This document shows, one piece after another, positions 1 to 57,060 of a stretch of DNA of 58,424 nucleotides (position 1 is the first letter of the stretch; each line of letters opens with the position of its first letter). Source of the DNA: Schmidtea nova (Eukaryota). A model generated the notes under the pieces. It did no database searches. It saw nothing but the letters and a program-made list of their open reading frames with translations, and had not been told where the DNA came from. Position numbers and translations under genes: made by a program. The DNA lies in the NCBI GenBank assembly GCA_044892505.1, contig CM097883.1:403439577-403498000 (forward strand), given 5' to 3'.

Positions 1-13
1 TATTATTAATATC

Positions 14-197
14 GATAATGCCCATAATGGATGACTAAAGATCAAAATTTTTTTAAATAAGTGCACAATATTTCGGCACAGCCTTTATCAAGTGTGTATT
101 TCAAATACACACTTGATAAAGGCTGTGCTGAAATATTGTGTTATTGTTTATAAAAAATATTGTGATCTATAGTCATCATTATGAGAATAATAAATTA
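14..197. repeat. Foldback (palindromic) MITE
   Basis: Arms atatttcggcacagcctttatcaagtgtgtattt / aaatacacacttgataaaggctgtgctgaaatat, outer arms atgactaaagatca / tgatctatagtcat. Related copies at about 1018-1137, 32025-32150, 42385-42480, 46085-46170 and 50679-50800. Confidence 0.85.
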
Positions 198-8435: not shown

Positions 8436-9060
8436 GAGATTCGCGAATGGATGCAGTAAAAATCTCCAACATCTTCAATCACAATCGATAGGATCGCCTG
8501 CTAAGAGAATAACAGCGGTCGATCCAACGGCTGACGGCTACCAACGAGCAGCTCAAGCAGAAATGGTTTGCTCCAGACGAATGAAGAATCAAATAATGAA
8601 AACCACTCGGACACAGAAAGCTCTAACAGAAACTAAAGCGGAATTGGATGCAGTGCAACGAGAACTACGAAGTTGTCTAAACTCCATAACCAGGCTCTAC
8701 ATCGATATGGAGCTTCGAGCCATCATTAGGCCGATTACAGCCCAAAGATGGACTTCAACCGAATTACAGAACCCCTCAGTCGGAACCGAATGCAACGATC
8801 TGCTGTCTACACACACAGCCCAAATCCAGCCACTGTCAACTTACCTACCAAATCCTGTGGCCATCTCGAGAAAGAGACGATCATGGTCGAAACAGTGGCG
8901 ATGTAAATGAGGATTTGCGCAACAACTAGCCGCGCAAGTAGACCGCTTAGCGATCTGTCCGAATTCGAATAGTGAGACAGTTTGTATTTATGTATGGTTA
9001 TGGACGAGGCATCCCTAGCATACCTACGTAATTATTTAAAACCCACCCATAAACCCAGCA
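8436..9060 (+). mobile_element. Family X 3' fragment (copy a): frameshifted ORF B plus terminal block
   Basis: QLKQKWFAP/(frameshift)RRMKNQI..ELRSCLNSIT..LRAIIRPIT..SVGT..RKRR matches ORF B. Ends aacccacccataaacccagca like the other copies. Confidence 0.8.
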
Positions 9061-9689: not shown

Positions 9690-10555
9690 ATTTTCTAGTA
9701 TGGCAGCTGAAATTAATGGAAAATGAATCAAAGTCTGCAAATGAGTGTGCCGAAACCATAAGTGCCATTAGGCAGAAATAGGGGTTCTCAAGAAGAGAAT
9801 CATTCAAATGGAGGCACATGAAAAAAACTAGAGCGAGCACAATGGACAGGAGTCAATTTACCGCTGGAATTGGATGCGGTTCGATTAGAATTAAGGAACT
9901 GCCGTAAGAGCATGACGCAAGAGTTTATCGACGCCAACCTACGAGAACGGATCCGGCCGTTTACCTACGACGAATGGACAAAACCGTCATCCTCAACCGA
10001 AGCTAATAAAACCCCGCCAACGTATCCACAGGTACTGGATTGAAGCCAAAACGAAACCAAATTGGATCTAGACAACGAAGTCACCAACAAAGAGGGACGT
10101 TCGTTCGACAAAATTACGACACAATTAACATGATGGACCTATTGGCAGAAATCGTCGTATTATAAATTCTGTGTTGTAATAAAGCTAAATATACCCTTGC
10201 AGCGCTTTATGTACTTTCTTGATATAATTCAGTACTGTTCATTTTGTTTCGTCCCGTACATTAAATGCTGTAAATAAGATAGTTGAGAGAAAAGGATGTC
10301 TCAAAAATTAGTGACCGGCGACGGGATGTGAAAAGATTTAGAAATTGTCTTTCATTGACCGAGGAGAAGCCGTAGTAGAGGCAAGCCGGGAGGAGTTGGC
10401 CTCGAGATTGCTCATCTGCCAACTTGATCTATGCCGAAGTGTACAGCACTAACATGAGAACAAAAGAGTCTCCTGGGTACACACTCGTTAAGGAAGTATT
10501 TATGACGGTGTCCACAACAAAATGCGCTAAGACAAATCAACTGGTACACCCAACA
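9690..10555 (+). mobile_element. Family X 3' fragment (copy b): decayed ORF B, structured RNA and right terminus
   Basis: ELRNCRKSMTQEFIDANLRERIRPFTYDEW..MDLLAEIVVL*, then AATAAA, RNA motif at ~10360-10485, terminus cccaaca at 10549-10555. Confidence 0.8.
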
Positions 10556-11799
10556 GGTTCGAAGATTTTGTTCTCATTACTTTGACTCGCGTAAACAGCT
10601 GATTCTAATGTTTTTTGCGCAAGAAAATTTGACATTTAGATCAAAAGATATATGCATTTAAAATACGTCTTTTTATTTTTTACATTTAAGTTTTGAAGGC
10701 TTCATAGGACAGGGAAGTATATGGAAGTATATGCTTGATCAGAGTACCTTAGAATTTCAAGGGCTTTCAAAGAATACCACTTTTGAAGAATTTGGAGGAG
10801 ATTTATTTTCATGTTAAAAACTTCGGACTTTTTAGTCTATGATGAATTATGATCCAATTCAGTTCATTTACGAATGGACTTATGCTAGATTTCTATTTAT
10901 GCTGGATCCTTTTATGCAGGACGTTTTGGCGATTTTTCCTTTTATTATCCACTCAGTATGAAGATTTGGAAAGGATAGTAGAACATATTTCTACTACCTC
11001 TCAAAAGTTCATTGTGGATGGAATAAACATCATGAAAGATAAATTCATTTTTTAATTTTTTAGAAAAATTAAATTAAATATAAGATAATTTTTTGTTAAA
11101 TTTATTTTTTTACGTTTATTCTGAAAGAAATATTTTGAAAAAGAATTTTTATAATAAATTATAAATATGCAAAAATTAATTTAAATGATTATTGTGAGTT
11201 TGCGGTAAATATTATTAGGCAAAATGTTAATATTGCCATTACTTCAATATTTTGCTTATTAATATTTACTCAGTTAAATTGGTGTATTTGATTCCCACTC
11301 AATATGTAGACGCCATATTGAAAGGAAATTCATAGAAAAAACATCAAAAATATCAACCAATCAAATCAAATAAAACCGCTTACGGCGTAAGCCGACTTCT
11401 ATTAATAAATATTTATACAGACATAATCAAGCATAGAATTTGATGAGATTAAGATTTGGGAAAGATAGATGTTTGATTGATGAATGAAAATGTTAATTAA
11501 TTTAAAAGCTTCCATTTTTAAATAGTAGCGGCAAATTGCCGGTTTGACGTCACTTGGTAAAAAAGGTATATTTCTGATCGTATCAAACGGAATGAGTGAG
11601 TTGAGATTTGAAAACTCGATCATTTCGTTTTGGGTGATCAGAAATATGCCTATTTTTCCAGGTGGCGTCAAACCGCCAATTTGTCAGTACTAAGATGTCA
11701 TTAGGAACGTCAATGCAAACTCGATCGAAAATCCACCTAACTAAGAATATCACTGAGCAGAAAGAAAATTCGAGTTGGATGTATATATTAAGACAGTAA

Positions 11800-12498
11800 T
11801 ACAATTTGTTAAGTAGTATGAATGCTCTTAATGGGTTTCGTTGTTGATTTATGTAAATGTAACTCCTAGTAATGAAGGGGTTTAAGCAAAGGTTTCTGAC
11901 AAACCGAGAGTTAAATAACGACACTAGGTGAAAGATTTAGAGAATTGAGAAGGAGAGTTAAGCATGATATGACTCGTGGAGTTTGAATTAATGATAATAT
12001 AAAATTCTCTTTTAGACATGCCCCCTTTCTCCTTGGAAACCAGTAAAGAAATCGGGGCGAAGTCAGAAACAAAGGAGGAAACGCCATCAACTTAGGAATA
12101 CGCAATTTCAGACTCAGTTAATGAATCAAGTCAACTGATTAGACAAATTGAGTGAACTGGAACTGACCGATGAAATTGTAATCCTGTGAAATGTGTATGT
12201 GTGTAATTATTTGTGTTTTAATATATTTTGGCGCTAAAGTTCTGTTGTACAGAATTTGTGTTTATCTCTTATCGACCGAAACGAACCCAGTAAAAGAGGT
12301 GGTCAACAGAGAGTGGTTTTGGAAAAGGAGCTCACCTGCTTGTTGAGTCTCAGACCACGGTATACAGTACCAACGCAATCATCTATAGAATGATTGCGAG
12401 TATGTACATGGGGGTCATTCCTAGTGTCCATATTCGTTTTCTTGTGTGGTGTATGGATGACAGTGAGTCCTTAGCGAAGAGAGTCTAAATCACCCATC
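11800..12498 (+). mobile_element. Divergent family X 3' fragment (copy c)
   Basis: Stop-riddled ORF B-like frames (ELRRRVKHDMTRG..; KLSELELTDEIVIL*), RNA motif at 12265-12410, possible terminus cccatca at ~12492-12498. Confidence 0.6.
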
Positions 12499-13879
12499 AC
12501 ACCACAAGACACAACAGAAATTGTTCAACAGTATAAGTATAAGTATAAGTATATTGTATAGTAATAATTTATGTGAATACTCCTTCGAATACGCAAATGA
12601 AGAGGCTAGAAGTTATCTGAAAATTTGATTTCATTCATCACAAAAAAATATAATTTAATATTTTAGGTTTAATTCTACAACCGGTATCGACGGAAACGCA
12701 AGTGTTACTGCCTGTCAAATCCGTGTCGACATTTCGGCATTTTATTCAGTTTATGCGCACCCAATAGATGAAGAATATTTAACGGAAAATACAAGGATTT
12801 TACGCACAGTTGGTGCTCCCGATCCCTGTTCCACGGTAAGAAACAATAAATAATGATTTGGTTATGGCATCATGCAGAGAATCTTTTGAGATTTCACAGA
12901 ATGAGCAGAAATTAAATAATCAGCTCAAGTAAATTTGACTGATAAAACATAATAAAACAGCCAATGAGATCACAAAGTACTTCCTCTTATCTGTCAGTGA
13001 CCAACTCACTAATTGCATCAATAATTTTACGGGTGTGCATGGTGTGCACGGTGTGCATCACACACGGACACGTGATGCCTACTACCTCGCGAGTAATAAT
13101 ATTCGTCACTATTTTTATCATTTTCTGTGCATTTTTTAACTGAAATTTTCGTTTGTTTTCATTTCATCTTTAAATAATATTGTATTTTCTAATAAGAATG
13201 TAATAATTATAAATGTTTAAAGGTACACAAATTGTTTTTGTTACTTTTATTACTATTAGTTTGTGAATTTATTTTAATTATTTTTAGATCTAAAAATGTA
13301 TCCATTTATTTGCGCGCACAGCTTCACCAAACCGCAGGACTGACACTGCGTAAAAAATTTACAATCTTTAGTTTATTTTCAAAATTTTCATTTAAACTAA
13401 ATTTAATAATTATTTCAAACAGGTGAAACGTGCTTATCAGCTACATGGATATTTGTCGGTCCATATAAGCTCAAGGCAGACCATAAATAAAAGTTAAGAC
13501 CATTTCATGGTTGTATATATATATATATATATATTCTTGGGTCTACCAAAGATCTAAAAAGCACAAAAACATAATAACAATCAAAACAAGATAATGAAAA
13601 AGTAAACTATTAAAACATAGAAAACCTAATGAAAAGGATAAAAACAAAAAATTATGTAAATAATAAATTACCAATAAGAATAAAATAAGCCGAATTGATG
13701 GAGAATAGGCCGAAAGAAGATCTAGAATAGAAATATGGAAAATTCGCATAAAATTAAGAAAATAATAGTACAATTTATTAAATAATTATTTGGAAAAATA
13801 AGACCACCAGGCGAGAAAATCTAAAACTGAACTAGAATCAGGTAACAATTAATTAAAAATAATGAACTAACTTTGAAGG

Positions 13880-15793: not shown

Positions 15794-16134
15794 AGACTAA
15801 CAAAACTCTCCTTCACAAAACATTTATTCAATAATTTTCATAAAATTATTAATACATTTTCAAATCTTTTTTAAATCCCCAACTCAAAATATCTTTATAT
15901 TCTAAAAACCCACACAGGCAAAATAATCAAAATAGCCCAGATAAACAATTCGTCAAAAGCCACTTTTCAAATCAAAAAACCCCAATAATCCTTAAAAACT
16001 GAAACAGTAAAACAACACTGTTTTTAAACAAAACTTTTTAGATAAATTCCAAAACCTTCCATCGATCACTTTTTAATTTTTTAAGCGAAAATCAACATCA
16101 TCGCGTCTGTGTGTGCACACCAAGAAATCATGAC

Positions 16135-16902
16135 AACCAACCTGCCAGGGGTCGACACAAGTATATCGCAGCGATACAATTTGTTCATTGATGCTCTCAT
16201 TTCGACTCCACCGTACGAATAGCTGCATTTGACTTATGAATCACGGCACAATCTGTTGGCTACAGTGAATATTTGTCGGCACAATTCCCGTGTTGGGACT
16301 AGAATCACACATTTCGGGGAATTTGTATTAATTTTTTCACCAATATTTTCTACTATATCCTTGATTATTGGCACAAGAATTGCTACTGTTTTACCACTTC
16401 CGGTTTGCGCACATGCCATTAGATCTCTCTTTAATGTTATCATCGGAATTGTGTATTTCTGTACCGGCGTTAACTTTTTATAATCGAAATTGCGGATATT
16501 TGCCAGTAGGAATTCGGGTAGTTGTAATTCCTCAAATGATGTTATCGATTCTGGGATGTTTCTGCCGGTTACGTGGACTTGAATGTTGTCATAATTGTCG
16601 AAATTAATCCCACTATTCACGTGGAGTTGATAATCTTCAGCGTTGTCATCGGGAATGTAGCTAACTCGGGGGATTGTCATAGGAATATCTCCATCTTCGA
16701 TGAGTTTCACACGATTATTATTGTTATTGCTATATTCACGGACGGATTGGGAGAAATTCTCTTTGTTAGCGTTGATATTTAGCTTGTCAATTGAGAGGTC
16801 TTCTTGCTCTACTTCGTGGGAATTATTATTAGGTGTATTAATGACATTGTTCAACCTCCGTCCCCGTCCACGTCCAATTTCATTGAATTTACTGGTATCC
16901 AT
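16135..16902 (-). pseudogene. vasa: 3'-truncated Vasa/DDX4-like DEAD-box helicase fragment with a premature stop
   Basis: SYIP..GINFDNYDNIQVHVTG, Q motif TPVQKYTIP, AQTGSGKT, PTRELCRQI, TAA at 16236-16234, then in-frame YGG..CDILVSTPGRL. No DEAD motif follows. DDX3/PL10 is not excluded. Confidence 0.8.
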
Positions 16903-17550: not shown

Positions 17551-18606
17551 ACAACTTTAACTGTTATTTTTTAACAAAACTCGTTCAAGGAAACACACAC
17601 TTTTTATCAAAACTAAACTTTGATTTTAAAAAAACTCGTTCACTGTTAGAAACACATTTTGAAATTTTACTCTCACACAAGCCACCAGGAGATACCTACG
17701 AAGTAAATTTTGTTTTGTTTTAAATTGTGTATTTTCTATTGATATGTACCATGATTTTATCCATTAAAATTTATTTATTCTTGCCTTTAATTATCATTAT
17801 CATTATTGTTTATCATGCATATAGTCATACTTCCTAGGCTGCTCACGCGGCGAGGGAGTCCAAGTCGTCGTTGTGGGGCTTCACGGCCTCACATGGCGGT
17901 TCAACCTTTTTATTTTTTGTAATTTAGTAATTTGGAAAAGTTGGTTTAAATCAGGAAATGTCGAAAATTCGAATTAAATCCGGACGATTTATTGGCGAGA
18001 ATAAAGGGTTGTAATGTTCAATTATTTCCATACTTATTTAGGTTGATAAAATTTTAATCACGAAATGTCAATAATTCGACTAAGTCCAGACGATTTTCTG
18101 GCGATAAGTAAAATATCATTTGTTCGGTTGCACAAAGGGCGTAACGTGGTGAGCCGTGGGAAAGGTTTAGAGAGATGTCGGAAGGTGTGAAGCACCCAAG
18201 GGGTGGTAGGTATCAGCCTCCGAGGTATTAATATTCTAGGATAACTTTTGAACTCAGGAGCGCAAGCGAGGTGCTATAAGTTTATAGAAATTTTCGATAG
18301 AATCGATTGAAACTATCAGTTCATTTGGGGTCAAAGTGCAGGCATTAGAATATCAATCTGAATAACATAGACGAATTACGTCACAAAATTCCAAATCAAA
18401 TAAATTTAACATGTAACCAATTCTATAAATATCTTTATGCCGATCGCTGTATATAGCGCGGTAATTCAAATAAATCTTATCCTGATCGTCGTACATACTA
18501 TCCGACCGTGGTATATCGCGGCGATGATGTAACGTTAAAATTTCCTTACCCGAAAAGTATTCATGTCTAATAAAATTTATTTAAAATTCTTTAAATGAAA
18601 TAATAG

Positions 18607-19083
18607 ATGTCGACAGCTTGGAGTGAAAAGTTAACTCGGATCCGGAATTCAGGAAAGGAGGACATGGCGAATAGATGGGCTAATCAACTCAAGGAGTTGC
18701 CCCCGCCGATTTTACGTACCCTCAACGCCCAGGTATATAAGTGGCGACGCGGATTCAATCGGATATGCCCGTTTTCCATCTGGAGTGGAGGAAAAGATCG
18801 AATTCTCTATCACGGAGGACCTGATTGGCCACTCTCGGGAAAAAGCTACCCTCGCAAGTTCGGACGACTGATTATCGTAATCCGAGATGGCAATGATCAA
18901 CCCTGCCGAATTATCTACTGGGGACACATCCCTCGCAAGGAACTATGCAGGCTAGGTTTACAGGAGTTCCTACCACGGAAATCGTTTGGCAAAGAATGCC
19001 AGGAGGGACAACCTCCATTTTCGTGGGCTCAACTTCGGCAAATGCCAATTAACCATGAGTTACATAGCCTGTTTCGGCGATGA
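18607..19083 (+). CDS. Family X ORF A, 158 aa, unknown Trp/Gly/Pro-rich protein
   Basis: Intact ORF. AG acceptor immediately before the ATG (18605-06), AATAAA about 25 nt after the stop. Paralogs at 20935, 29328 (minus) and 27002 (minus). Confidence 0.8.
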   Translation: MSTAWSEKLTRIRNSGKEDMANRWANQLKELPPPILRTLNAQVYKWRRGFNRICPFSIWSGGKDRILYHGGPDWPLSGKSYPRKFGRLIIVIRDGNDQPCRIIYWGHIPRKELCRLGLQEFLPRKSFGKECQEGQPPFSWAQLRQMPINHELHSLFRR

Positions 19084-19248
19084 AATTTTGTTGACAGTGA
19101 TGATTAGTGAATAAAATCTTATTATTAATTAGTGGTCTTTGTTCTGGTTTTATCGTATTTTGACATAACAATAATTCACTTATATTGTAAATATAAACAT
19201 GTTTTAACATAAAAGCGGCAAATCATTGAATTTAAATCAATTACAGAA

Positions 19249-19845
19249 ATGAATATAGAAACAGCGCAAAGAGAACTCGAAAAGATGTGGAGAATCCGGA
19301 GAGCCCAGGACAAGGAATTGGGTCTCCTCAAGGAACAATTATCCAAGGCCGAGGCGCAAATCGCCTATTTGCGCAAAAGCTGGTTCGCTCCAGCTCGAAT
19401 GAAGGAACAGATTGGTAAAACGGAGCGTGCACAACGAACAGCAGAGGACTAAAAAATGGAATGGGAAGCTACGAAAATCGAGCTTCGGAAGTGCCTACAT
19501 TCCGTGACAGCCTCCTACATCGAACGGGAGCTGCGGGATCAAATCCGACCGGTAACTTATCAAGAATGGACGGCGGAGAAGAAGAGTGTAACTTCGATTG
19601 GCACAGACGTCGACGACCTTAGCGAAATTTGCAACGGGCCAGTTCCAGAAATCAAAGCGGCCACCCAAACTGCCAATACTCATCAGAAACGTAAGCGCAT
19701 AGGGCAGAAAAGGCGCCGTCAAAGAAAGCTGTTCGCTCAACGGATGCAGAACCAAGTCGACGATCTGCACAAATTGACAGAGAAGGAACTATTGGAAGAA
19801 ATATTTCCCCCAGCCGGAATTTTTACCGATTTGATTGGAAAATAA
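19249..19845 (+). pseudogene. Family X ORF B (coiled-coil + basic motif) with one in-frame TAA
   Basis: The two listed ORFs are one frame split by TAA at 19450-52, at the position where the paralog has Tyr (AEEYLVKWE). Acceptor at 19245-46. Confidence 0.85.
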
Positions 19846-20021
19846 ATACGAATTTCAAATTTTGGTCATTCTTGTTGTTTCATTAATTTAGTTTTTATTA
19901 ATAAGTAATAAGCAAATAAATAATTATGAGAGCGCTAGTTTAGGAAGCTTCCTGTAGAATAAATGATATCAAAGACCAATGTTCCGAAAGTTTATTGTGG
20001 ATTACATAGTATGTCATTAAA

Positions 20022-20170
20022 GCGTAAGTCCTTCTAACGGCAGCAATGAACCCGTAAACATAAATGGGGAGTAGTACTAGCAATAGTGCTCACCTGCCCA
20101 TCATTGTTTAACCACACTGCGAATCACCAACTTGATTACCCAGGGAAATAATCAAGGGCGCTTGAGTGTA
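20022..20170 (+). ncRNA. Family X conserved structured RNA (copy R3)
   Basis: AGTACTA-GCAA-TAGTGCT hairpin, GGAGT/CACCTG core, and a second domain with an ATCACCAA loop and a cttgatta/taatcaag stem. Covaries with five other copies. Confidence 0.8.
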
Positions 20171-20934
20171 TAATTGCACATTTTATGTATGATCATGGAT
20201 GATGGATTAGTCATTGTTAGAACATTTTTCGTCTAACCCCTCCATGAACCCAGCAATAGTTTCGATTTCATATTTTATAGCACTAGTGTGGATTTCACCG
20301 TTTATAGCGATAGTTGACGACACCTTATTCTTAATATTAGTTTGAGTTTTTAACATTTATTTTTGCACAGTGAGGATTGTGAGCCACACAATTTTATATC
20401 AACCAAGAGGACGATGTTAGCGTTGGTCTCGCCAAATAATGCTTTGTTACCCGTATAAAGTTCCATCCAGAGGACTAATGCTACAATCAACATCAGTTTA
20501 ATGATTATATTAGATATATCTAGCGTACGTCGGTATGCCTAATTACTAGTTGGCATTAGATAAGTCACCCATAGATATAACAGGGGTGTTAGACAAATTG
20601 ATTTAGAAATACCTGTGTGATATTTAGACGGGGTTCTAGGTAGAGTTTTATGGGGAACTGCAATTCACGTATGCTCAGTCACGACTATTAAATAAGAATG
20701 CACAAAGTATCATCGCCACACCTATATAATATAAAATTTATAAAACCATAGTTCACCTGAATCAATTTACAAATCAGTCATACCCGATAATATCAGGCTT
20801 AATTATACTGTATAATAAGAATTTTCCAAGAATGGAATTATCACCTAAAATTTTCATACCGAGGATTGAGGCGAAAATATTCGACAAAAGATTTAAATAA
20901 TGATTATATAACTATTTGGTGTTTTCCAATGCAG

Positions 20935-21459
20935 ATGGAACCTAAATCAATAGAACAGTGCGGGGCAGCTCAGAGAGGGATAACTAATCCAACTGGCATT
21001 TCATCAAGGAGGACCAGTCAAGGGATGAAAAATCTACCACCCCCGATTCTGAGGACGGTGAATGCACAAATGTTCAAATGGAGGCGGGCATTCGGGGAGA
21101 AAAGCCCATTTTCTGTTTGGGAAACCGGTCGAGACAAGGTGATCTATCGAGGAGGCCCCGGTTGGCCAATCTCAGCAAACCAATGTTATTCGTCTAAATT
21201 CGGGAGAATCATCATCATTGTCTACAATCACAATCAGGAGCCGCAAAGAGTGATATATTGGGGACACATCCCTCAAGGCAAACTCGCCGAACAAGGCCTA
21301 AATTTGTTTACTTCGCCGCGCCCTCTCGGAAAAACGCATGAGAAAAGGATGCCAGATTTTTCACTCGCGGGACTTCGTCAAACCTCCATCGATGCGGGCC
21401 TCCACGTTGTCCATGTGTTTACCAAACTATGGCATAATATTGTGATTGATACCCAGTAG
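20935..21459 (+). CDS. Family X ORF A paralog, ~174 aa
   Basis: cag|ATG start, LPPPILRTVNAQMFKWRR..PFSVW..YRGGPGWP..IYWGHIP, AATAAA just after the stop. Confidence 0.8.
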   Translation: MEPKSIEQCGAAQRGITNPTGISSRRTSQGMKNLPPPILRTVNAQMFKWRRAFGEKSPFSVWETGRDKVIYRGGPGWPISANQCYSSKFGRIIIIVYNHNQEPQRVIYWGHIPQGKLAEQGLNLFTSPRPLGKTHEKRMPDFSLAGLRQTSIDAGLHVVHVFTKLWHNIVIDTQ

Positions 21460-21623
21460 TCAATGAGAATAAATTTGTACCTAAATTTGTTTTTTGTTTG
21501 TCTTAGCAAAGTATTGTTTATTTTACTCATAAAACATCTAGATATTTTACTATGAGTATTGTTAAAAAGCAATTAAATTTCTACTCCTATTTTTCCAAAA
21601 CCTAATTATCTTATTTGTGCAGA

Positions 21624-22217
21624 ATGATCCGAGAGACAGATCCCCAAGCCGAACGAGAGAAAGCTTTGAGAATACGAATTAGTTTAGAAAAAGAAATTAA
21701 GCAAGTAAAAACCCAATTAGCTCAAGCAGAGGCACAAATCCAATATCTAAGTAAGAGCTGGTTTGCGCCAGCGCGGATGAAAAATCAGCTGACTTGTACG
21801 GAACGCGTCCAGCGAACAGCGGAAGAATACCTGGTCAAGTGGGAGGCAAATAAAATCGAGCTCCGAAAATGCCTCCACTCAGTGACGACCTCATTTATTA
21901 ACACTGAACTCAGAGCACAGATCAGGCCCATCACGTATGAAAATTGGGTGGGATATAAGAAACCCGCATGTTCAGTAGGAACTGATGTCAAGGGTTTGGA
22001 GGCCGTAACCGTTTTAACTCCACCACAGGTCACGGAAATCGCTGCAAGTTCCAACAGCATTAAGAAGAGAAAGCGAATAGGATTCAAGCGCCGAAGACAG
22101 AAGAAACTGTTCGCTCTGCAGTTGCAGGAACATGTCGAACGAATGGCCGATATGAGCGAGATGGATTTGCTAGCTGAGATTCTCACACTCAACAGAGATT
22201 TTCAAGAATTATTATAA
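21624..22217 (+). CDS. Family X ORF B paralog, ~197 aa, intact
   Basis: cag|aATG start, heptad-like N-terminus, WFAPARMKNQ, ELRKCLHSVT, KRKRIGFKRRR, LLAEIL, AATAAA after the stop. Confidence 0.8.
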   Translation: MIRETDPQAEREKALRIRISLEKEIKQVKTQLAQAEAQIQYLSKSWFAPARMKNQLTCTERVQRTAEEYLVKWEANKIELRKCLHSVTTSFINTELRAQIRPITYENWVGYKKPACSVGTDVKGLEAVTVLTPPQVTEIAASSNSIKKRKRIGFKRRRQKKLFALQLQEHVERMADMSEMDLLAEILTLNRDFQELL

Positions 22218-22355
22218 TTAAATAAATTTCGACGCCATAACGCATTTTTCTTTTGTCTTATATAGTTTAAGGAGTTTGTAATCTGATTAAATCCCTATTT
22301 AAAAGACGTTTTTATTTATTTTTGAAATTTGAGCATAAATATTGCGAACATAATA

Positions 22356-22500
22356 GCGTAAGACCTTCTAGCGGCAGCAGGAACCCGTGAAAATAAATGG
22401 GGAGTAGTTCCAGCAATGGAGCTCACCTGTCCATCATTTTTCAATCACCTTGTGCATTTCCAACCTAACTGTATGGGGAACAGTTAGGGGCGCTCGATTG
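22356..22500 (+). ncRNA. Family X conserved structured RNA (copy R4)
   Basis: AGTTCCA-GCAA-TGGAGCT and cctaactgt/acagttagg, compensatory relative to R3. Confidence 0.8.
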
Positions 22501-23659
22501 ATATAGTGTATGTTTATGCATGATTATGCATAGGGTCTCCCTAGCATAGTTACATATCATTTTCTCAACCCTTCCATAAACCCAGGAATAAATAAATATA
22601 TTATAAATTTTTAATTTACTGTAAAATTAAATTAGTATAAAGCAGCTTATGCCGTTCCCGTCAAAGAATAGGTAACCCTCACGAATAGTATATTTATTGG
22701 ATATTTGGCACTGGAAACGGGAAACAAATCTTGCAAAACGTAAAAAGGAAGAATACGTGATAGTGGCGAGTGTCACTCTGTTTTTATTTTAAATTTGTAT
22801 TTTTCTAATCATAATTTGGGGAAAAAAAGTTTTTTGTAATTTTTATTGCCAATTTTCGTAAATTTATTTTGGCAATTACTTTTAGATTTGAAAAAAATGT
22901 ATCCATTTATTTTTGTCACCACAAACCTTAGGACCCACCATTATCGTAATCCAAGCAATTTATATAACTATTTTAAATATGCTAAAAAATATCAGGAAAA
23001 CTAATCTTTGTTCTAGTAATTTTAACTACCATTAATTTTTTGTGATGCTTTTGTCTTTCATTATTATTTATTCATTTTATATTATTATTTCATTTATTAT
23101 TTGTTTTGTTGGATTGGTTATATATTGTTTTTTTCAAATAATTGAGTGAACCTGTGCCGAACCTCCAAGCAGTTCTCAAGGTTACGAATCACTGCAGTAG
23201 TAGTATCTGCGGAAGAATCGAATCGAAGAAAGACAAACACAAGTTCATTATTGCAAGAACCTAATATAACTGACGTTGAGACTTTCGATATTCTAGCACG
23301 TCGGCCTTATGAATGACAATGACGTCGAGAGATTTGGATTTAGTTATTGATATGTTACAATAAAAGTATGAATTTCAGTAAATGAATAAATTTAACTAGT
23401 AAAGTATAAACACTTTTGCTAGAAAATGACGGAAATGATTTCAGTGGTTAACCTTACAAAATTTGACCTAAGTAATTACGCTAAATTTAGTGAAGGGTTT
23501 ATTATAATTATTATTACAATTGTTGTGTTCTGATATAAAAATGATGGATCTTAAAAACAAGGAAAACCAAAAACATAGTTAAAAATCATCGAAATATTTA
23601 AAGTCCGAAAATTAATTGAAATTTCAGAAAAATTAATATTTACCGGGAGAAACAGATAT

Positions 23660-25620
23660 GGTTGAACGCCGACTCGAGAAACGAACCCAAATATATTAAT
23701 AAAAATTTAGTGAGGGGTCTCTAAGAAAAGTAATAAGAAAAAACAAATTAATTAATCCCTTAATGGAAAACACGAGCTAATGAAAAGCCTGAGCAGTGTG
23801 GTAAACCGGGATGTGAAGAAAGCCGAGCCGTATGAAAAAGCCCGGGTATTCAAAATAATTAATGTCATTTTTAGTAAATCATCTAAATAGTCAGCCGGTG
23901 AAATTCCTCCGGAATTACCGAAATAATTGTCAAGCAGTGATTAAAATGTTTTGACAGCAACAGTATAAAAAGAGCTGTTGAAAGACCAGGCGCCCAAAAA
24001 CCTGCTAACAGAATCGGAGCGTATACTATTGATATACAACGAGCTAGAGGTTAGTAAAGTTAGAAGAGAAACAAATTTTTATGTAAAATATTAACTATGT
24101 TAATGTCCAAAAAAGGTGATTTCCCCTTGAGTAACCCGCCTTAAGTCAATAAACCTTGTTATTGAAAGAGGAGTGCAAATACAGTGAAAATTGTGATTTG
24201 TTTTTGAAAAGTCAATAAATTTATTCTGTGTTGGCTTTTTGTCAATTAATTAATAAGGAAAGGACATAGGAAGTCAGAGATTAACCGACCATTCCATTAT
24301 AATCCAACTTTTTGGTAAGCCCGGCGTGATTATAGTCGGTGAAACGAAAATAAATTGGTGAAAATTGAAATAGTAAAAACGAGATAAATTTTAGTGCTGA
24401 AAATAAAAAAAAATTGAAAAAAAATTGTGGTGATTGAAACAAAACAAAAATAAAAAATTGAAAGAGGATATTGACGATAATCAGTTCAAGATTAAAAAAA
24501 GGCAATATTAATAATTGTAATATTTGAAAATTTAGACGAGAAAGAGTTGTGCCAAAGAAAGTTTACAATCTGTGAAATAAGAAATATTTGGAAAATATGA
24601 TAAGCAATCCCAACAGTAATGATGAAATAGTAATGTCTATTATCTAGACAAACAATGGCAACGGCTTTGGGAGCTGTCAGAAACTGCAGTTGATCAAGAT
24701 GGAGGATATCCGGTTGAATTCATTGATTTCATGGAGAATTATTTAAAATACGCATAAGCTTACGGATGGAGTCAGACGATCATGGTACAGCGGTTACCAC
24801 TTCATTTAAAGAGAACAGTAAGAAATGCCTGGCAACAAATTGACAAAAGAAAATGATTTGAGAAGGCTGAAAGATGCATTGACAGCAAATTTGATCGAAG
24901 GTGACATTAAAAGAATAATACGTTAGAAATTCTACAATTGAATACAAAAGCCAGATGAGTCGGTAAGCGAATTTCCACATAATTTAACTACTCTTGCAGA
25001 AAAAGCTTTTGAAGTAAAAATTGGACAAGCTGAGGTTGTGAAACAAGTGAAAGAATTATTACAAGATCAATTTTTAACAGGAGTTAAATGAGATCAAGAA
25101 AGCATTACGCTTTGTTGACTACAATAATTTTGATGAATTGATCAAAAAGGCCATGAAAATTGAATTGAATTTAAAAACTACTCAGTAAAAAGCTGAATTC
25201 TTTGCAACTATAAGTGAAACAAGAAGAAAAATCAATAACTCCAATTCGAAATAACGAACTTCAAAAATCAACCAGCCCATCGCCGAAGCTCAGAGTGAAA
25301 TCTGAATCGAGAAAGTCAACAGAAGGTTTGAAAAATGAGAATGCAGTCATTGTCAAAGAATGGGACATAACATAAATAAATGTTGGTTTAAAAACGTTTT
25401 ATTAAAATGAACACCAATAGTCAGCGGGCTAATGACAACATACAGTGTTGCAATTGAAGAAGAAAAGGACATGTTTCACGAAATTGTTTAGCAAGATCAA
25501 GATCTCCATCAACGTCTCCATCACAGCAAAGAAGTAGAGTAAATCTCCGAAGTCAAATCCAATGCCACTCTTGGCACCTTTTTATTTTGCTTATTATAAA
25601 TTTGCACTATTCAGCCAGAA
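23660..25620 (+). mobile_element. Ty3/Gypsy 5' LTR, PBS and decayed gag
   Basis: LTR end near 24308, PBS tggtaagcccggcgtgat at 24312 (tRNA-Trp-like), retrotransposon gag motifs (YGWSQ..ESVSE), knuckle CSHCQRMGHNINKC. The LTR start is approximate. Confidence 0.8.
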
Positions 25621-26839: not shown

Positions 26840-28329
26840 CGGTAAACCACCTGTTGACCACCTGAATGATTTCGAATGGTGCTGGTTTTAGAGGGCTGAT
26901 CCGCACTCGGTTTCGTTTGAGTTGCCCGTTTTTCTATCCCCGCTGATTCTCTTTCCTTTTATATACTTTCGGTTTTCTCTTTAGTAGCTTCATATTTGAC
27001 ATTTTGTCTAGACAATGACACAAAAAAAATCATTTATTATTTTGGAAAACGTATTTGTGAAATATAATATTCTCTCTCCTCGCACATTGTATTTTATTAC
27101 ACGCTTTCCCTTTATGTACTGGGTCGAGTTTACGATGAGAAACTGTCGATCTAAGTTAGTAAAAAACATATATTACTGGTATCTGCTCTCTAACCTTTGA
27201 TTGTTCTAAATGAGCCTATTTGTTTGGAATTACTGTTGAAAATCTACAGTTTGTAGTTATTCTGCAGTGATATTACTTCGGTGCATGTTGGAAAAAGGTT
27301 TTCGTTCGAAAAACTTCGGGTACCTTCTAATAACGCATCTCATGTCTACTCTGGGTTAGGCTGTTTCAGTACTTAGAAAAATTCAGTAGAATTGTGCCTT
27401 CATCACAACACTTTTGTGTAATTTCTCGCCCCTTGATTTCATTGTCCCATGTGCAACTCTGAAAAAACTTTATTATATTTTAGACATTATTGACTTCTCT
27501 ACCGGGTGTAAGGCCTCTAAGCACCACGACGCGGACTTAGACCCTGGGAACATGTAGCTCCCATTTGGCGCCCTAATATCTATAGTTATAATATAGTGTA
27601 AAATCATCAAAATTCAACAAATTATAAAATATAATGATATAAAACATGATTACAATTATACGGCATAAATCATATAGCAATAAAATATTAATACACATAA
27701 ACCAAAGTACCTAAATTTGATCCGCAATTTTCGGTAAAAATTCTGTCTAAAATATGCTTGTCTGTTGTCCTGAAAATCAGTCTAAATCGAATCAAGTTCA
27801 AATTGAATTCACTCAAGTAAATGCAGTGCAATGGCATATAAGGCATGTTTTCAACTAAATTCTGATCAGTATATATAGTATATTGGTCAGTCTAGACCAG
27901 ACAGATCAGTATATATTATATACTGATCTGTCTGGTCTAGACTGACCAATCAAGTTTGGCCGCTTCCATGGTAGGTCTCATTATTATTTTGTTTTACCTA
28001 ATTAATTTTTATTTTTTCAGGTTGAACTCTCTCTAGGTGGTCCTAATTTTGGATCAATTATTCAATAAAAAGTACTTTTATTTTGTTTAATTTGTTTAAT
28101 ATTCTACATTTTATTTGGTTTTAGATTCCTTATTCAATGACAAATTTATGATTTCTCTTGGCCACTCTATTCCCTAATTTATAAATTTATCTATAATTTA
28201 TTTATAATTTATTTATAATTTATTTATGTCTTTTAAATCCAAAATTTAAATTTCTTAATCTACGTTTTTCTTTTTTGTTTTAATTATCACTAATTTTTTT
28301 CCTTTTTACTCTTTTTAGCTGGCCCAACA
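26840..28329 (-). mobile_element. Family X 5' fragment (copy g) with truncated ORF A (ATG 27002)
   Basis: TGTTGGG at 28329, promoter palindrome, hairpins 27503-27575, acceptor 27008-10, MSNMKLLKRK..LKPAPFEIIQ. Confidence 0.8.
27882..27950. repeat. Perfect 33-bp-arm palindrome duplicating the CCAAT-TATA promoter
   Basis: attggtcagtctagaccagacagatcagtatat-tat-atatactgatctgtctggtctagactgaccaat. Confidence 0.95.
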
Positions 28330-28803: not shown

Positions 28804-29328
28804 TTATTCGCTGGACATTTTTCCTCGATAGGAAAATATGGTCCGGATTTGCAGATTCATTTTGACTTCGGTGGGAAGGTTGGCAGTAGTTTTCAGCCGT
28901 TCTTTTTCGGCTTCCCGGAGTGGTCGGATTGCGACATTGAAGATGATCCCCAGCTCCTTGAATGTTGAGACAGGAATATAACCCCAATAAATTACGAAAT
29001 TCGGGAATCCGTTTTCGACCAGCATTAGGATAAACCACTCCGAGTGTCATCGTTCGAATTCTTCACCCGGAATTATGGGCCAGTTAGCACATCCTCGGTA
29101 CCATACGTGATGGCGTGGGTGATCCCACACGGTGAAGGGACATGCAGTATCTAATTCCCTCCTCCAGGCCCACATCTTCTGGTGAACCTACTGGATGATA
29201 TCGAAAGGAGCGGGCTTTAGACGACTGATCCGTACTATATTTCGCTTGAGCTGACCGTTTTTCCATCCCCACTGATTCTCTGGTTTGACTGCTCTCCGTT
29301 TTCTCTTTAGCACATTTACATTTGACAT
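28804..29328 (-). pseudogene. Family X ORF A with two in-frame stops
   Basis: LKPAPFDIIQ*VHQKMWAWRK..CPFTVW..YRGCANWP..ER*HSEWFILM..VIYWGYIP in one frame. Confidence 0.85.
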
Positions 29329-29600
29329 TTTTCCTGGACAAACACAAAAATTTTATCATTTATTATTTCAAATAATAGTCAGGTTAAATTTAATATTCTC
29401 TCTCCTCGCTCGTTGTAGTTTAACACGCTTATACCCTTGATGCTCTGGGTCGTTGTTATGATGAGGAAAACTGTCGAACTGAGATGGTAGAAACTTATAT
29501 CTTTACTTATGTCTAGTCTCCGATTTTTATTGTTTTAATTGCGCTTATTCGTTCGTCTATCACTGTTGCCAATTTACGGGGTGTAATTACTCTGTAGCGA

Positions 29601-29927
29601 TGTATGCAAAAAATGCTTTTGACCCAAAAAATTCATTCTCATGGCGCCTCTCATGTCTATACCGGGGTCGGCTGTCTCAATAATATAATTCTCTCACTTC
29701 AACTAATTCGTGTGATTTGCTGACCCTTAATTTCATCTGTCCCATGTGCGAACCTCTAAAAAATGTATGCAAAAAATGCTTTTGACCCAAAAAATTCATT
29801 CTCATGGCGTCTCTCATGTCTATACCGGGGTCGGCTGTCTCAATAATATAATTCTCTCACTTCAACTAATTCGTGTGATTTGCTGACCCTTAATTTCATC
29901 TGTCCCATGTGCGAACCTCTAAAAAAT
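29601..29927. repeat. 162-bp near-perfect tandem duplication in the family X intron
   Basis: Units start at 29601 and 29763. One visible substitution (gcgcctc / gcgtctc). Confidence 0.9.
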
Positions 29928-30771
29928 GTTATTATAGCTTAGATGTTACTAGTTTTCCTGAAAACTTTAATATATTTTAAACGTTTCCAACTCTCATACC
30001 GGGTGTGGAGCCTCTAAGCACCACGACGCGGATCTACACCCTGGGAACTTGTAGCTCCCATTTGGCGCAATAATTATATATGACACTGATTAAAATTATT
30101 AATATATAACATATAATTATTATAACAAAATTTACAGCAAAAATCATGAGCGACAGCATTAAAATAATAAAACCAAAGTACCTAATTCACAATTCTGGTT
30201 TCGAAATTCTAGATACGGTAATACTAGGTCCAACTATAGTCTAGTTTCAATTGATCGGCTGGATAGTTGTATTGAAAAAAATCAGTCAAGTTAGATTGAA
30301 TCAAAGTCTAGTCTAACTCAAGTCAAAATTTGTTCATGTTTTTAACTGAATTTCAATCGGTATTTATATCGATTTGGCTGGATCAGACTAACCAATCAGG
30401 TTTGATCGTCTCCACCGTAGGTCTCATTATTTATTTTATTTACCTAATTAATTTTTTGTTTTTCAGATTCAATACTCTCTAGGTGGTCCAGTTTTCCAAC
30501 CAATTTTCCAATTACAAGTACTTTTATTTTATTAAATTGTTAATTTTCTACATTTTATTTGTCTTAGGTACCTCTTATGACGGCTAATTTTAAGATCCAT
30601 CTAAAACTTCTCTATAATTTATTTATAATTAAATAGTAATTTATTTATCTTTTATTTATATTATCCTTTTTTTTTACATTTAACATTCGCATTTCTTAGC
30701 TTATATTTTTTCCTTTTGTTTTAATTGTTATTCATTTATTTTCCTTTTTTCTCTGTTTAGCTGGTCCAACA

Positions 30772-35722: not shown

Positions 35723-36128
35723 TGTTGGTGTTCTGGTGTGGACATCGGAAAATTTTTGAACGTGACCTGGGGATGGATGTCACTCACACCACAACATAAA
35801 TGTATATCTATCAAGTTCGCACACCCATGGTGATTCCCCGGATAACCATGTTGGAACTGTGTACGACGGTGAGAGGATGGAGGACAGGTGAGCCCCTTTA
35901 CAAAGACTACTCCCCCACGCTCCCTTCAACGGGTTCTGGCGGCCGTTAGAAGGTCTTACGCTTCTCATCTGTTTCTCTGTCTTGCACTACACTCTAGTTT
36001 TCGAAATTTAAATTATTATAAAAAACACGAATCATTTGTTTAATTATTATCTTAATTAAAATCTTCCATTTGCTTTTTACTTGAATACGAAATAAACACA
36101 AGTCGGAGAGAAAATACATTTATTATTC
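35723..36128 (-). mobile_element. Family X 3' fragment (copy j) with RNA motif R5
   Basis: Minus strand gcgtaagaccttctaacgg..gaacccgt..GAGT AGTCTTT-GTAA-AGGGGCT CACCTG..acac AGTTCCAA catggt/accatg g gtgt, ending accaaca at 35723. Confidence 0.85.
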
Positions 36129-38126: not shown

Positions 38127-38238
38127 GTCCACGACCATACTAGTCTGGGTTCATCCGATCTCGGAAGTTAAGCAGGCTAAGGCCTCGTTAGTACTTGGAT
38201 GGGTGACCGCCTAGGAATACGAGGTGTTGTGGACTTTT
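38127..38238 (+). rRNA. 5S: 5S rRNA copy with an internal deletion of about 10 nt (likely pseudogene)
   Basis: Helix I GTCCACGAC/GTTGTGGAC, helix II TAGTCTG/CAGGCTA, box A AGTTAAGC, box C TGGATGGGTGACC, T4 terminator. The loop B/helix III region is shortened. Confidence 0.9.
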
Positions 38239-53935: not shown

Positions 53936-53942
53936 GTAAGCT

Positions 53943-56383: not shown

Positions 56384-57060
56384 TGTCGGGCACCGAGTCA
56401 TGGCCCCATGGCCCTCGGGTTATGCAATATGTTACCGTTAAACTAGCTATTCTATGAAATAGCTTCATTATACACAGCGTTTTTGGTGCTTATTTAAATT
56501 TTGTTTATCTAGTCGCAATGCAACACATAAAAAGCTTACTGTCCATGTACCAGTAAATAACCAATGTACTTACGTTGGTAATGTACATGACAGGCGAATG
56601 TGAATAGACAGGTGAGCTTCTTTGCAAAAGCTACTCCTGATTCTACCATTCTCGCGGGTTCCCTAGTGACCGATAGAAGGTCTTCACTTGATCCCGTCTC
56701 ACCCTTTGTCACTGGTCACTAATTTTAAGGTGCATTCTCTGTGATTTTATATTCACTATTTACATGCGCATTTACAAATTTACCCTATATGATCCTGTTT
56801 ACTTTTGTTTTTAATTTCAAAGCAAAAAGAGTCAACACAATGGAATACATTTATTTATGATCCTTATTTACAATACAAATTTTATTGCACATTCTGGGAT
56901 TCTATCATCTTTTGCATCAATTGTCTATTCTTTCGTTGACGTTTCTGCGAGCTAATCCTCTTACGCTTTTTACCCTTTACTGGCGGCTTAATTGATGTAG
57001 TGTCTTAGCTTTCAATTTCACGTGGTGTAGGGTACCATTTTGACAACGAATTTTGCGATG
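56384..57060 (-). mobile_element. Family X 3' fragment (copy k): ORF B C-terminus and RNA motif R6
   Basis: KGKKRKRISSQKRQRK, AATAAA, then aagaccttctatcgg..gaacccg..GAGT AGCTTTT-GCAA-AGAAGCT CACCTG..catgtac ATTACCAA..gtacatg. The end may be cccgaca at 56384. Confidence 0.8.

What the first reader, a model, noticed from the sequence alone, without database searches (positions are those of the whole stretch)
20022..20170. Two-domain structured RNA with covariation across six copies; partly twister-ribozyme-like
Seen at ~10360, 12265, 20022, 22356 (plus) and 35961, 56688 (minus). Domain 1: AAGACCUUCUA-NCGG..GAACCCG, an A-rich linker, GGAGU, a 7-bp hairpin with a GNRA loop (AGUACUA/UAGUGCU, AGUUCCA/UGGAGCU, AGUCUUU/AGGGGCU, AGCUUUU/AGAAGCU; loops GCAA, GUAA, GAAA), then CACCUG. 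Domain 2: a covarying helix (gtgtac/gtacac, gtatac/gtatgt, gtgc/gcgc, gtacac/gtgtgc, catgtac/gtacatg) enclosing a fixed 8-nt A(N3)C(C/U)AA loop and a variable stem. The order stem, A-rich linker, GGG-GA-GUA, hairpin, U-N-A, CCU recalls type-P3 twister. However, the putative cleavage site is UCA rather than UAA and the T1 pseudoknot is incomplete.
Basis: partly seen in the sequence, partly recalled or inferred. Interest (0 to 1): 0.88.

Follow-up and report, generated by a model that had tools for sequence, protein, structure and literature searches.

The report
Conserved structured RNA module, probably intronic
Six diverged copies of a roughly 230-base non-coding RNA module with two covarying hairpin domains close a repeated two-gene unit in an AT-rich animal genome. 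The structure is real, under selection and matches no known RNA family, but nothing supports the twister-ribozyme reading.

Summary
A covariance model built from the six copies scores them at 104-154 bits, and the next best hit in the window scores 8.9 bits. There are two covarying hairpin domains. One is an irregular hairpin with a 7-bp tip, a GNRA loop and an invariant 1x3 internal loop. The other is a hairpin with a fixed 9-nt asymmetric internal loop. In total 80.5% of pair cells are paired, against 34-54% in slid controls, and 14 of 25 pairs show double changes.

The twister reading is not supported. Three Rfam scans at E<=10 returned no ribozyme family, and the twister loop letters, pseudoknots and U-A cleavage site are absent.

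Each copy lies on the sense strand, 3' of an orphan two-ORF unit (ORF1 about 175 aa, ORF2 about 197 aa). Five of six copies keep an ORF2 remnant. Units A and B are saturated at synonymous sites and random in their spacers, yet 74-77% identical across the module (z = 22).

The conserved island starts at a 5'-splice-site-like GUAAGU/GUAAGA and ends at a C-rich tract plus CAG.

Best reading: a selected, non-catalytic, protein-recognised RNA module in the 3' non-coding part of the unit, possibly a structured spliceosomal intron. No relatives were found outside the window.

The parts
20024..20253 (+). Module copy A, the copy in the finding. It runs from a 5'-splice-site-like GU to a C-rich tract plus CAG and is 230 nt long.
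   Evidence: R1 scores 153.5 bits over 20012-20176. The copy is 74-77% identical to copy B, z = 22.4 against shuffles.
20055..20110 (+). Domain 1 of copy A, a long irregular hairpin. It has a 6-bp lower stem, a 3x3 loop, a 5-bp stem, a G/G mismatch and an AG/CU step. It then has an invariant 1x3 internal loop (U against CAC) and a 7-bp tip with loop GCAA.
   Evidence: Minimum-free-energy and centroid folds; consensus fold with 14 pairs, 6 of them with double changes; lower-stem compensations between copies A and B read.
20115..20168 (+). Domain 2 of copy A. The outer helix is GCG/CGC plus CACU/AGUG. The 5' internal loop ends in ACCAAC. The inner stem is 7 bp (20132-20138 with 20149-20155), and the 3' side is G-rich.
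20171..20253 (+). Tail of copy A. It contains the motif U-N-UAUG, which is invariant in all six copies and in the tail-only copy, then a CUAAC branch-like site, a C-rich tract and CAG.
   Evidence: tail A against tail B gives z = 8.2.
22358..22585 (+). Module copy B, 228 nt. An AATAAA starts 2 nt after its CAG.
   Evidence: R1 scores 154 bits.
35767..35959 (-). Module copy at 35961, 193 nt, with a shorter tail. No ORF2 remnant was recognised upstream.
   Evidence: R1 scores 144.2 bits.
56414..56687 (-). Module copy at 56688. The donor-like site reads GUGAAG and the end reads CCCGAG. The upstream region runs into an N run at 57061-57245, which was left untouched.
   Evidence: R1 scores 128.8 bits.
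12248..12517 (+). Module copy at 12265, which is diverged. The donor-like site and the 5' hairpin are lost. Domain 2 is perfect (8-bp inner stem, 6-bp outer helix).
   Evidence: R1 scores 125 bits.
10331..10556 (+). Module copy at 10360, the most decayed. The tip of domain 1 is disturbed, and one invariant letter of the 3' strand is changed.
   Evidence: R1 scores 104.2 bits.
8973..9058 (+). Tail-only copy. The tail follows an ORF2-like stretch directly; the spacer and both hairpin domains are absent.
   Evidence: 72.7% identical to 22499-22585; alignment.
18607..19083 (+). ORF1 of unit A, 158 aa, open.
19249..19845 (+). ORF2 of unit A. It is broken by one in-frame stop and has no frameshift.
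20935..21459 (+). ORF1 of unit B, 174 aa from the ATG that follows an AG. It is open.
21624..22217 (+). ORF2 of unit B, 197 aa, open. It has a coiled-coil-like N-terminal part, a conserved core and a basic K/R run.
8437..8950 (+). ORF2-like pseudogene piece, with one stop in the homologous stretch.
9780..10180 (+). ORF2-like pseudogene upstream of copy 10360, with several stops and at least one frameshift.
12040..12185 (+). Remnant of the ORF2 C-terminus upstream of copy 12265. It has one stop and its 5' part is missing.
28807..29226 (-). ORF1-like pseudogene piece, with one stop and the N-terminal part missing. No module lies next to it.

Best explanation
The six copies are paralogues of one non-coding module, 190-275 nt long. 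The module closes a lineage-specific, locally amplified two-ORF unit, on the same strand as the ORFs. It acts as RNA. Two hairpin domains, whose stems change by compensation, hold a small set of invariant unpaired letters in fixed positions. These are a 1x3 internal loop under a GNRA-capped tip, and a 9-nt asymmetric internal loop. That is the anatomy of a protein-recognition (RNP) platform, not of a catalytic core. The module is bounded by a 5'-splice-site-like GU and by a C-rich tract plus CAG. It is therefore most likely a conserved, structured spliceosomal intron, or an RNA released from one, in the 3' non-coding part of the unit. The structure would then govern a post-transcriptional step in cis, such as splicing coupled to 3'-end formation, export, stability or localisation. 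Shown here: the copies, the structure, its strand, purifying selection, the position after ORF2, and the absence of any known family. Inferred: protein binding, the intron status, and the step that is controlled.
For: Structure and covariation. Strand: 23 G-U cells against 10 A-C cells, and GNRA loops only on this strand. Selection: units A and B are saturated at synonymous sites (pS 0.87) while pN is 0.32-0.36. The ORF2-to-module spacer, the ORF1-to-ORF2 spacer and the 200 nt after the module align no better than shuffles (z 0.0, -0.4, -0.4). The module gives z = 22.4, its core 22.5 and its tail 8.2. Position: five of six copies have an ORF2 or ORF2 C-terminal remnant upstream. Boundaries: AGC followed by GUAAGU or GUAAGA in three copies and CAA followed by GUGAAG in a fourth; a C-rich tract plus (C)AG at the end in all six; a CUAAC-type site in the tail. 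The A/B similarity block (20015-20258 against 22349-22590) overruns these sites by only 9 and 5 nt. The conservation pattern (loops fixed, stems variable) is the reverse of a miRNA precursor. No Rfam family matches.
Against: There are only six sequences, all from one window, and no copy was found elsewhere. There are no transcript data, so splicing and even transcription are unproven. An AATAAA sits within 30 nt of the ORF2 stop and 125-190 nt upstream of the module in five copies. If that signal is used, the module is not part of the ORF2 mRNA. The two most decayed copies lack the donor-like site. A terminal exon that starts 2 nt before AATAAA (copy B) would be very short. The unit's proteins have no relatives and no confident fold, so no partner protein can be named.
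Confidence: 0.5

Rival explanations
1. The module is a 3'-end recognition signal of a non-autonomous retroposon family. In this reading it is the tail that a reverse transcriptase encoded elsewhere in the genome binds to start copying, as in stringent-type LINE/SINE pairs. The covariation would have arisen among active subfamilies before each copy inserted.
For: Many diverged copies lie on both strands within 58 kb, next to unrelated genes. The ORFs are decayed while the 3' ends are well kept. One copy (35961) has no recognisable ORF upstream. Both the hairpins and the extreme tail are conserved. Stringent LINEs are recognised through a 3' stem-loop with an internal loop (PMC4176376, PMC1636434).
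Against: No reverse transcriptase, endonuclease or other transposon domain was found in any ORF tested. The last ORF before the module is a 197-aa protein, not a reverse transcriptase. No terminal A-run or microsatellite and no target-site duplications were seen. The units lie head to tail in two arrays (8.4-12.5 kb and 18.6-22.6 kb) with saturated divergence, which looks like old tandem duplication. ATG contexts and AATAAA positions are conserved as in ordinary genes.
Confidence: 0.2
2. The module is a separate stable non-coding RNA, snoRNA-like or of a new class. It would be processed from the intron or from a downstream non-coding cistron, and it would act in trans.
For: The island of conservation is surrounded by randomised 'exon' sequence, as in snoRNA host genes. 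An AATAAA right after the ORF2 stop could end the mRNA before the module. The fixed single-stranded letters could serve as guide or binding sites.
Against: By eye, no C/D or H/ACA box arrangement sits at conserved positions, and no two-sided pocket is present (own reading). No Rfam hit was found. The module always travels with the two-ORF unit.
Confidence: 0.15
3. The module is a self-cleaving ribozyme, either a degenerate type-P3 twister or a new class.
For: The order of elements recalls a permuted twister: a short CGG/CCG stem, an A-rich linker, a G-rich strand, a hairpin, a 3-nt strand and a C-rich strand. Invariant internal-loop letters are common in ribozymes. Natural twisters are reported to tolerate imperfections (bioRxiv 10.1101/2024.07.11.603121, listed).
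Against: Three Rfam scans at E<=10 found no ribozyme family. The loop letters that form T1 and T2 and the U-A cleavage step in the twister table of PMC8501958 are absent. The would-be L1 strand is one nucleotide. The would-be P4 stem shows no covariation and is broken in two copies (and reading). The would-be P3 has no partner strand.
Confidence: 0.05
4. The module has no RNA function. It would be a slowly decaying DNA repeat, or a DNA-level signal, whose apparent pairing is an effect of shared ancestry.
For: There are only six related sequences, and shuffle controls ignore relatedness (caveat stated by the tool). Thermodynamic z-scores are weak.
Against: Slid-partner controls keep relatedness and fall to 34-54% paired, against 80.5% observed. 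The inner stem of domain 2 has a different sequence in every copy yet still pairs. The G-U excess is strand-specific. The flanks of A and B are randomised while the module is not.
Confidence: 0.05

Closest known systems
Twister ribozyme, type P3 permutation (Rfam twister families; domain table in PMC8501958)
   Same: The linear order is the same: a short stem, an A-rich linker, a G-rich strand, a closing hairpin, a 3-nt strand and a C-rich strand that pairs back to the G-rich strand.
   Different: No covariance-model match was found at E<=10. The loop equivalent to L4 and the strand equivalent to L1 lack the conserved twister letters, so neither pseudoknot can form. The site has an invariant CAC instead of a U-A step. 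No P3 partner exists. The second domain has no counterpart in twister.
3' tails of stringent-type LINEs and their partner SINEs (zebrafish and eel elements; PMC4176376, PMC1636434)
   Same: Both are conserved 3'-terminal hairpins whose internal loop and loop letters are fixed while the stems vary. Both are shared by many diverged copies on both strands.
   Different: No reverse-transcriptase partner, terminal repeat or target-site duplication was found. The module follows a small orphan ORF, is far larger than those tails, and is bounded by splice-site-like signals.
Introner-like elements, which are multi-copy spliceosomal introns with stable predicted structure (PMC3609843)
   Same: Both are families of related, longer-than-usual intron-like sequences with predicted stable secondary structure and canonical GU...AG ends.
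   Different: Introner-like elements sit in many unrelated genes and are near-identical when young. Here every copy belongs to the same paralogous unit, the copies are old, and the structure is kept by compensation.
Intron-hosted small RNAs in non-coding host genes (snoRNA host genes; own knowledge)
   Same: Both are conserved structured RNAs inside an intron whose flanking exon sequence is not conserved.
   Different: No C/D or H/ACA boxes or pockets are present, and no Rfam match was found. The module fills nearly the whole intron, from 8 nt after the GU.
Retroelement RNA export or packaging hairpins near a splice donor or the 3' end (constitutive-transport-element type; own knowledge, not tested here)
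   Same: Both are extended irregular hairpins with fixed internal loops, act in cis on an RNA that carries small ORFs, and lie next to a splice-donor-like site.
   Different: No retroelement genes are present and no sequence or model match was found. This is a likeness of anatomy only.

Membership tests
Twister ribozyme | A match to the family covariance models (types P1, P3, P5, and twister-sister) in Rfam | tested here: not met
   cmscan at E<=10 on 19950-20300, 22330-22600 and 35740-35990 returned no ribozyme family at all. The gathering-threshold scan of the whole window returned only 5S rRNA.
Twister ribozyme | Conserved loop nucleotides (L4, L1, L2) that form pseudoknots T1 and T2 | tested here: not met
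   Compared with the domain table in PMC8501958. The would-be L4 is 10-12 nt with only its last four letters fixed. The would-be L1 3' strand is a single U. No complementary partners were found.
Twister ribozyme | A cleavage step U-A in the 3-nt strand next to P1 | tested here: not met
   The 3-nt strand is CAC in five copies and CAU in the sixth.
Twister ribozyme | Self-cleavage | not testable with these tools
   This needs in vitro transcription of the natural RNA.
Spliceosomal (U2-type) intron | A GU at the 5' end in a donor-like context and an AG at the 3' end after a pyrimidine tract, with a branch-like site | tested here: met
   GUAAGU or GUAAGA after AGC in three copies and GUGAAG in a fourth. 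A C-rich tract plus (C)AG is present in all six, with a CUAAC-type site in the tail. Two decayed copies lack the donor. The consensus signals come from own knowledge.
Spliceosomal (U2-type) intron | Removal from the transcript (junction reads, lariat) | not testable with these tools
   No transcript data are available.
LINE/SINE 3' tail | An autonomous partner encoding a reverse transcriptase that carries the same tail | tested here: inconclusive
   None was found in the window. The rest of the genome could not be searched.
LINE/SINE 3' tail | A terminal A-run or short tandem repeat, and target-site duplications | tested here: not met
   None was seen at the ends of the six copies. The ends of the older copies are imprecise.
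Box C/D or H/ACA snoRNA | Box motifs at fixed places, with a terminal stem or two-sided pockets | tested here: not met
   No Rfam hit. No boxes sit at conserved columns of A3/A5. The box definitions come from own knowledge.
miRNA precursor | Conserved arms and a variable loop | tested here: not met
   The pattern is the opposite one. The Rfam miRNA hits at 14-15 bits lie far below their gathering scores.
SECIS, histone stem-loop and other curated 3'-UTR elements | A match to an Rfam model | tested here: not met

The most novel reading that the evidence does not exclude
The module is a new class of structured spliceosomal intron or intron-borne RNP RNA. It would have co-evolved for a very long time with an orphan two-ORF unit, perhaps bound by the unit's own basic ORF2 protein. 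Less likely, it is a new self-cleaving motif.
Probability: 0.2. Interest if true: 0.7.

Novelty: new member of a known kind. Interest (0 to 1): 0.42.

Why it matters
Conserved, covarying RNA structures in animal nuclear genomes that match no curated family are uncommon. This one is unusually clear. It is an island of strong constraint whose ends coincide with splice-site-like signals, inside a gene family with no relatives among 1.8 billion representative proteins. If it is a structured intron or an intron-borne RNA, it offers a compact model for how RNA structure steers splicing, 3'-end choice or RNP assembly in an under-sampled animal lineage. If it is a retroposon tail, it defines a new recognition signal. 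Either way, the twister label should not be carried forward.

Tried and rejected
1. Rfam. The gathering scan of the window and three E<=10 scans gave nothing but 5S rRNA and chance hits.

2. Search for copies elsewhere. The first IMG/VR pattern scan used a wrong spacer length (N18 instead of N13), which was my error. Its 15 hits were chance. The corrected pattern gave 2 viral and at least 120 metagenome stretches. Of these, the 2 viral and the 80 metagenome stretches returned as loci were scanned, and none matched the model. The contigs of the nearest helicase relative were also blank.

3. Proteins. ORF1 and ORF2 have no Pfam, PDB or word-index relatives and no IMG/VR relatives. The exhaustive HMMER search with ORF2 gave one weak coiled-coil hit. 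The exact look-up was blank. The AlphaFold model of ORF1 was too poor (pLDDT 49) to use for a fold search.

4. Host identity. The RING ORF had no relatives. The best helicase hit was only 59% identical.

5. tRNA-, 5S- or 7SL-derived SINE head. ARAGORN found no tRNA and Rfam found nothing.

6. Spliced-leader RNA gene. Rejected because the 30-40 nt before the GU are not conserved between copies.

7. A long-range helix between the CUUCU stretch and the GGGAG stretch. It pairs in several registers, so it is uninformative.

8. A loop-loop contact inside domain 2. It is seen in three copies only and is sterically doubtful, so it was dropped.

9. A micro-ORF at the invariant AUG of the tail. The peptides are not conserved (own reading).

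10. Literature search for the motif letters. It returned only primers.

Full report
THE WINDOW. The window is AT-rich (24-41% G+C) and eukaryotic. It holds the N-terminal half of a Vasa/DDX3-type DEAD-box gene, a RING-finger ORF and an Ig C2-set ORF. It also holds a 5S rRNA gene and many repeats. Eight N runs are present; they were left untouched.

THE OBSERVATION. A covariance model built from that alignment, using the two hairpin domains as structure, was run over the whole window with filters off. It scored the six copies at 104-154 bits, and the next best hit at 8.9 bits. So there are exactly six copies, at the stated places and on the stated strands. A 29-nt pattern with 16 fixed letters from the flanks of the tip hairpin occurs four times, against 0.00 expected.

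THE STRUCTURE.
- Domain 1 is a long irregular hairpin. In copy A it spans 20055-20110. It consists of a lower stem, a 3x3 loop, a 5-bp stem and a G/G mismatch, followed by two invariant pairs and a 1x3 internal loop (U against CAC). It ends in a 7-bp tip closed by a GNRA loop.
- Domain 2 spans 20115-20168 in copy A. It has an outer helix of 3 to 8 bp and a 9- or 10-nt 5' internal loop. The last five letters of that loop are CCAAC in five copies and CUAAC in the sixth. Then come an inner stem of 6 to 9 bp and two or three purines on the 3' side.
- On the model alignment, 80.5% of pair cells are standard pairs, against 33.6-53.7% when the partners are slid by 1-3 columns. Fourteen of 25 pairs show changes on both sides, including all 7 pairs of the inner stem, and no shuffle out of 500 reaches the observed score. 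One copy (56688) is misaligned by two columns in domain 2, so these numbers understate the support.
- There are 23 G-U cells against 10 A-C cells, and the GNRA loops exist only on this strand.
- A 5' hairpin (CGG/CCG with a 10-12-nt loop) is possible. It never varies in four copies and is broken in the other two, so it is not established.
- Folding energies of single copies are unremarkable. The case rests on covariation.

THE TWISTER READING.
- Rfam 15 gave no ribozyme family for three copies, even at E<=10 with the lax filters used for short stretches.
- I compared the module with the domain-by-domain table of natural twisters printed in PMC8501958.
- The linear order of elements is similar, but the loop that would be L4 does not carry the twister letters.
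- The strand that would be the 5-nt L1 is one U.
- The 3-nt strand at the would-be cleavage site is CAC without a U-A step.
- No T1 or T2 partner exists, and no P3 partner strand exists.
- The resemblance is therefore one of layout only.

THE CONTEXT.
- Copies A (20022) and B (22356) each lie 3' of a pair of ORFs on the same strand: ORF1 at 18607-19083 and 20935-21459, and ORF2 at 19249-19845 and 21624-22217.
- The two units share 44-52% of their residues.
- Further ORF2-like pieces lie at 8437-8950 and at 9780-10180, the latter followed by copy 10360.
- ORF2 C-terminal remnants (a basic run plus an acidic-leucine motif) precede copies 12265 and 56688.
- An ORF1-like piece lies at 28807-29226 on the minus strand.
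- Five of six copies are thus tied to ORF2. None was recognised upstream of copy 35961.

BREAKS IN THE ORFs.
- ORF2 of unit A has one stop.
- The 8437 piece has one stop.
- The 9780 piece has several stops and at least one frameshift.
- The 12040 remnant has one stop and has lost its 5' part.
- The ORF1-like piece has one stop and has lost its N-terminal part.
- Both ORFs of unit B and ORF1 of unit A are open.
- The places of the breaks are deliberately not listed.

THE TAIL-ONLY COPY. At 8973-9058 the tail follows an ORF2-like piece directly and lacks both hairpin domains.

THE ARRAYS. The units form two head-to-tail arrays, at about 8.4-12.5 kb and 18.6-22.6 kb, plus two single copies on the other strand.

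SELECTION.
- Between units A and B, synonymous sites are saturated (pS 0.87) while pN is 0.32-0.36.
- The spacers after ORF1 and after ORF2, and the 200 nt after the module, align no better than shuffled sequence (z -0.4, 0.0, -0.4).
- The module aligns at 74-77% identity with z = 22.4; the core gives 22.5 and the tail 8.2.
- The module is therefore an island of strong purifying selection in old paralogues.

THE BOUNDARIES.
- The A/B similarity block (20015-20258 against 22349-22590) starts 9 nt before a GU. That GU reads GUAAGU or GUAAGA after AGC. The same holds in copy 35961, and copy 56688 has GUGAAG.
- The block ends 5 nt after a CAG that follows a C-rich tract and a CUAAC-type site.
- All six copies end in a C-rich tract plus (C)AG.
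- The lengths are 230, 228, 193 and 274 nt.
- By textbook splice signals (own knowledge), this is what a spliceosomal intron looks like.
- In copy B an AATAAA begins 2 nt after the CAG.
- An AATAAA also lies within 30 nt of the stop of ORF1 and of ORF2 in both units, and 125-190 nt upstream of the module in five copies. The base rate in the window is 3.07 per kb.
- The ATG of each ORF in units A and B directly follows an AG: after a pyrimidine-rich stretch for ORF1 and ORF2 of unit B and ORF2 of unit A, after a weak one for ORF1 of unit A.
- These signals suggest a compact, possibly polycistronic or trans-spliced unit, but that is inference.

RELATIVES ELSEWHERE.
- No relatives were found outside the window.
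- The corrected pattern gave only chance matches in IMG/VR and, among the 80 of at least 120 metagenome stretches that were returned and scanned, no match to the model.
- An earlier scan used a wrong spacer length by my mistake.
- ORF1 and ORF2 have no Pfam or PDB match, no word-index relatives and no IMG/VR relatives.
- An exhaustive HMMER search with ORF2 against 1.84 billion representatives gave one weak coiled-coil hit.
- No reverse transcriptase or other transposon domain was found in any ORF tested.
- The host lineage is poorly sampled: the best helicase relative is 59% identical.

INTERPRETATION. The anatomy is variable stems holding a few invariant unpaired letters, a GNRA cap, the sense strand, strong constraint and no catalytic-family signature. 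This fits a protein-recognised cis-acting RNA module. I put about 0.5 on that reading, with the intron form as the most likely setting (about 0.4 on its own).
- Retroposon 3' tail read by a reverse transcriptase in trans: 0.2. It is supported by the number, orientation and decay of the copies. It is weakened by the absence of any retroelement hallmark and by the tandem arrays.
- Separate intron-borne stable RNA: 0.15.
- Ribozyme: 0.05.
- No RNA function: 0.05.

NOVELTY. This is a new RNA family of a known general kind, a conserved structured non-coding module attached to a gene or element family. It is not a member of any curated family. Interest is moderate: the structure is clean and the intron-like bounds are unusual, but the evidence comes from six copies in one window and there are no transcripts.

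- Early in my reasoning I began to write the sequence of a known ribozyme from memory. I stopped, sent it to no tool, and it plays no part in the argument.
- Short textbook signals (splice sites, poly(A) hexamer, snoRNA and Sm boxes, tRNA promoter boxes) were recalled from my own knowledge and are marked as such.

Noticed in passing
window 38127-38235 (+); 37349-38035 and 24488-25163: A 5S rRNA gene scores 86 bits in Rfam. The roughly 680 nt just upstream of it are a 68%-identical repeat of 24488-25163, which has no 5S gene after it.
   Followed up: partly
window 16123-16902 (-): Only the N-terminal half of a Vasa/DDX3-type DEAD-box helicase is present (RGG-like start, Q motif, motif I). No helicase-C part was found anywhere in the window, so this is a gene fragment or has a distant or diverged second half.
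   Followed up: partly
window 1-191, 1018-1137, 32006-32148, 42385-42485, 46066-46166, 50679-50798: A palindromic, MITE-like repeat family has copies up to 98% identical. Several copies abut N runs. The N runs were not touched.
   Followed up: no
window 1416-2117 (-), 48145-48846 (+), 12849-13014: A repeated ORF family (85% nucleotide identity between the two long copies) has no Pfam match. A fragment lies about 430 nt downstream of module copy 12265.
   Followed up: partly
window 26862-28329 and 29191-30771; 29600-29929: A diverged 2.4-kb tandem duplication (about 70-74% identical) flanks the ORF1-like pseudogene piece. Inside it, a 163-nt unit is duplicated at 99% identity.
   Followed up: no
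window 20252-20314: A 27-nt tandem repeat (2.3 copies) begins exactly at the 3' end of module copy A.
   Followed up: no
window 18604-18609, 19244-19251, 20930-20937, 21618-21626: The ATG of ORF1 and of ORF2 in units A and B directly follows an AG; a pyrimidine-rich stretch precedes it in three of the four, a weak one before ORF1 of unit A. An AATAAA follows each stop within 30 nt. This is the layout seen in trans-spliced polycistronic units, but that reading is inference only.
   Followed up: partly
window 53272-53955 (+) and 53942-54105: An ORF with an Ig C2-set domain ends in a 24-nt tandem repeat of 6.8 copies.
   Followed up: no
window 43268-44701 (+): A 477-aa ORF with an N-terminal RING-H2 finger had no relative at E<=0.001 in the word-index protein search.
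   Followed up: partly
window 8973-9058 (+): A copy of the module tail is joined directly to an ORF2-like pseudogene piece, without the spacer and the two hairpin domains. This is an internal deletion, not a precise loss of the putative intron.
   Followed up: yes
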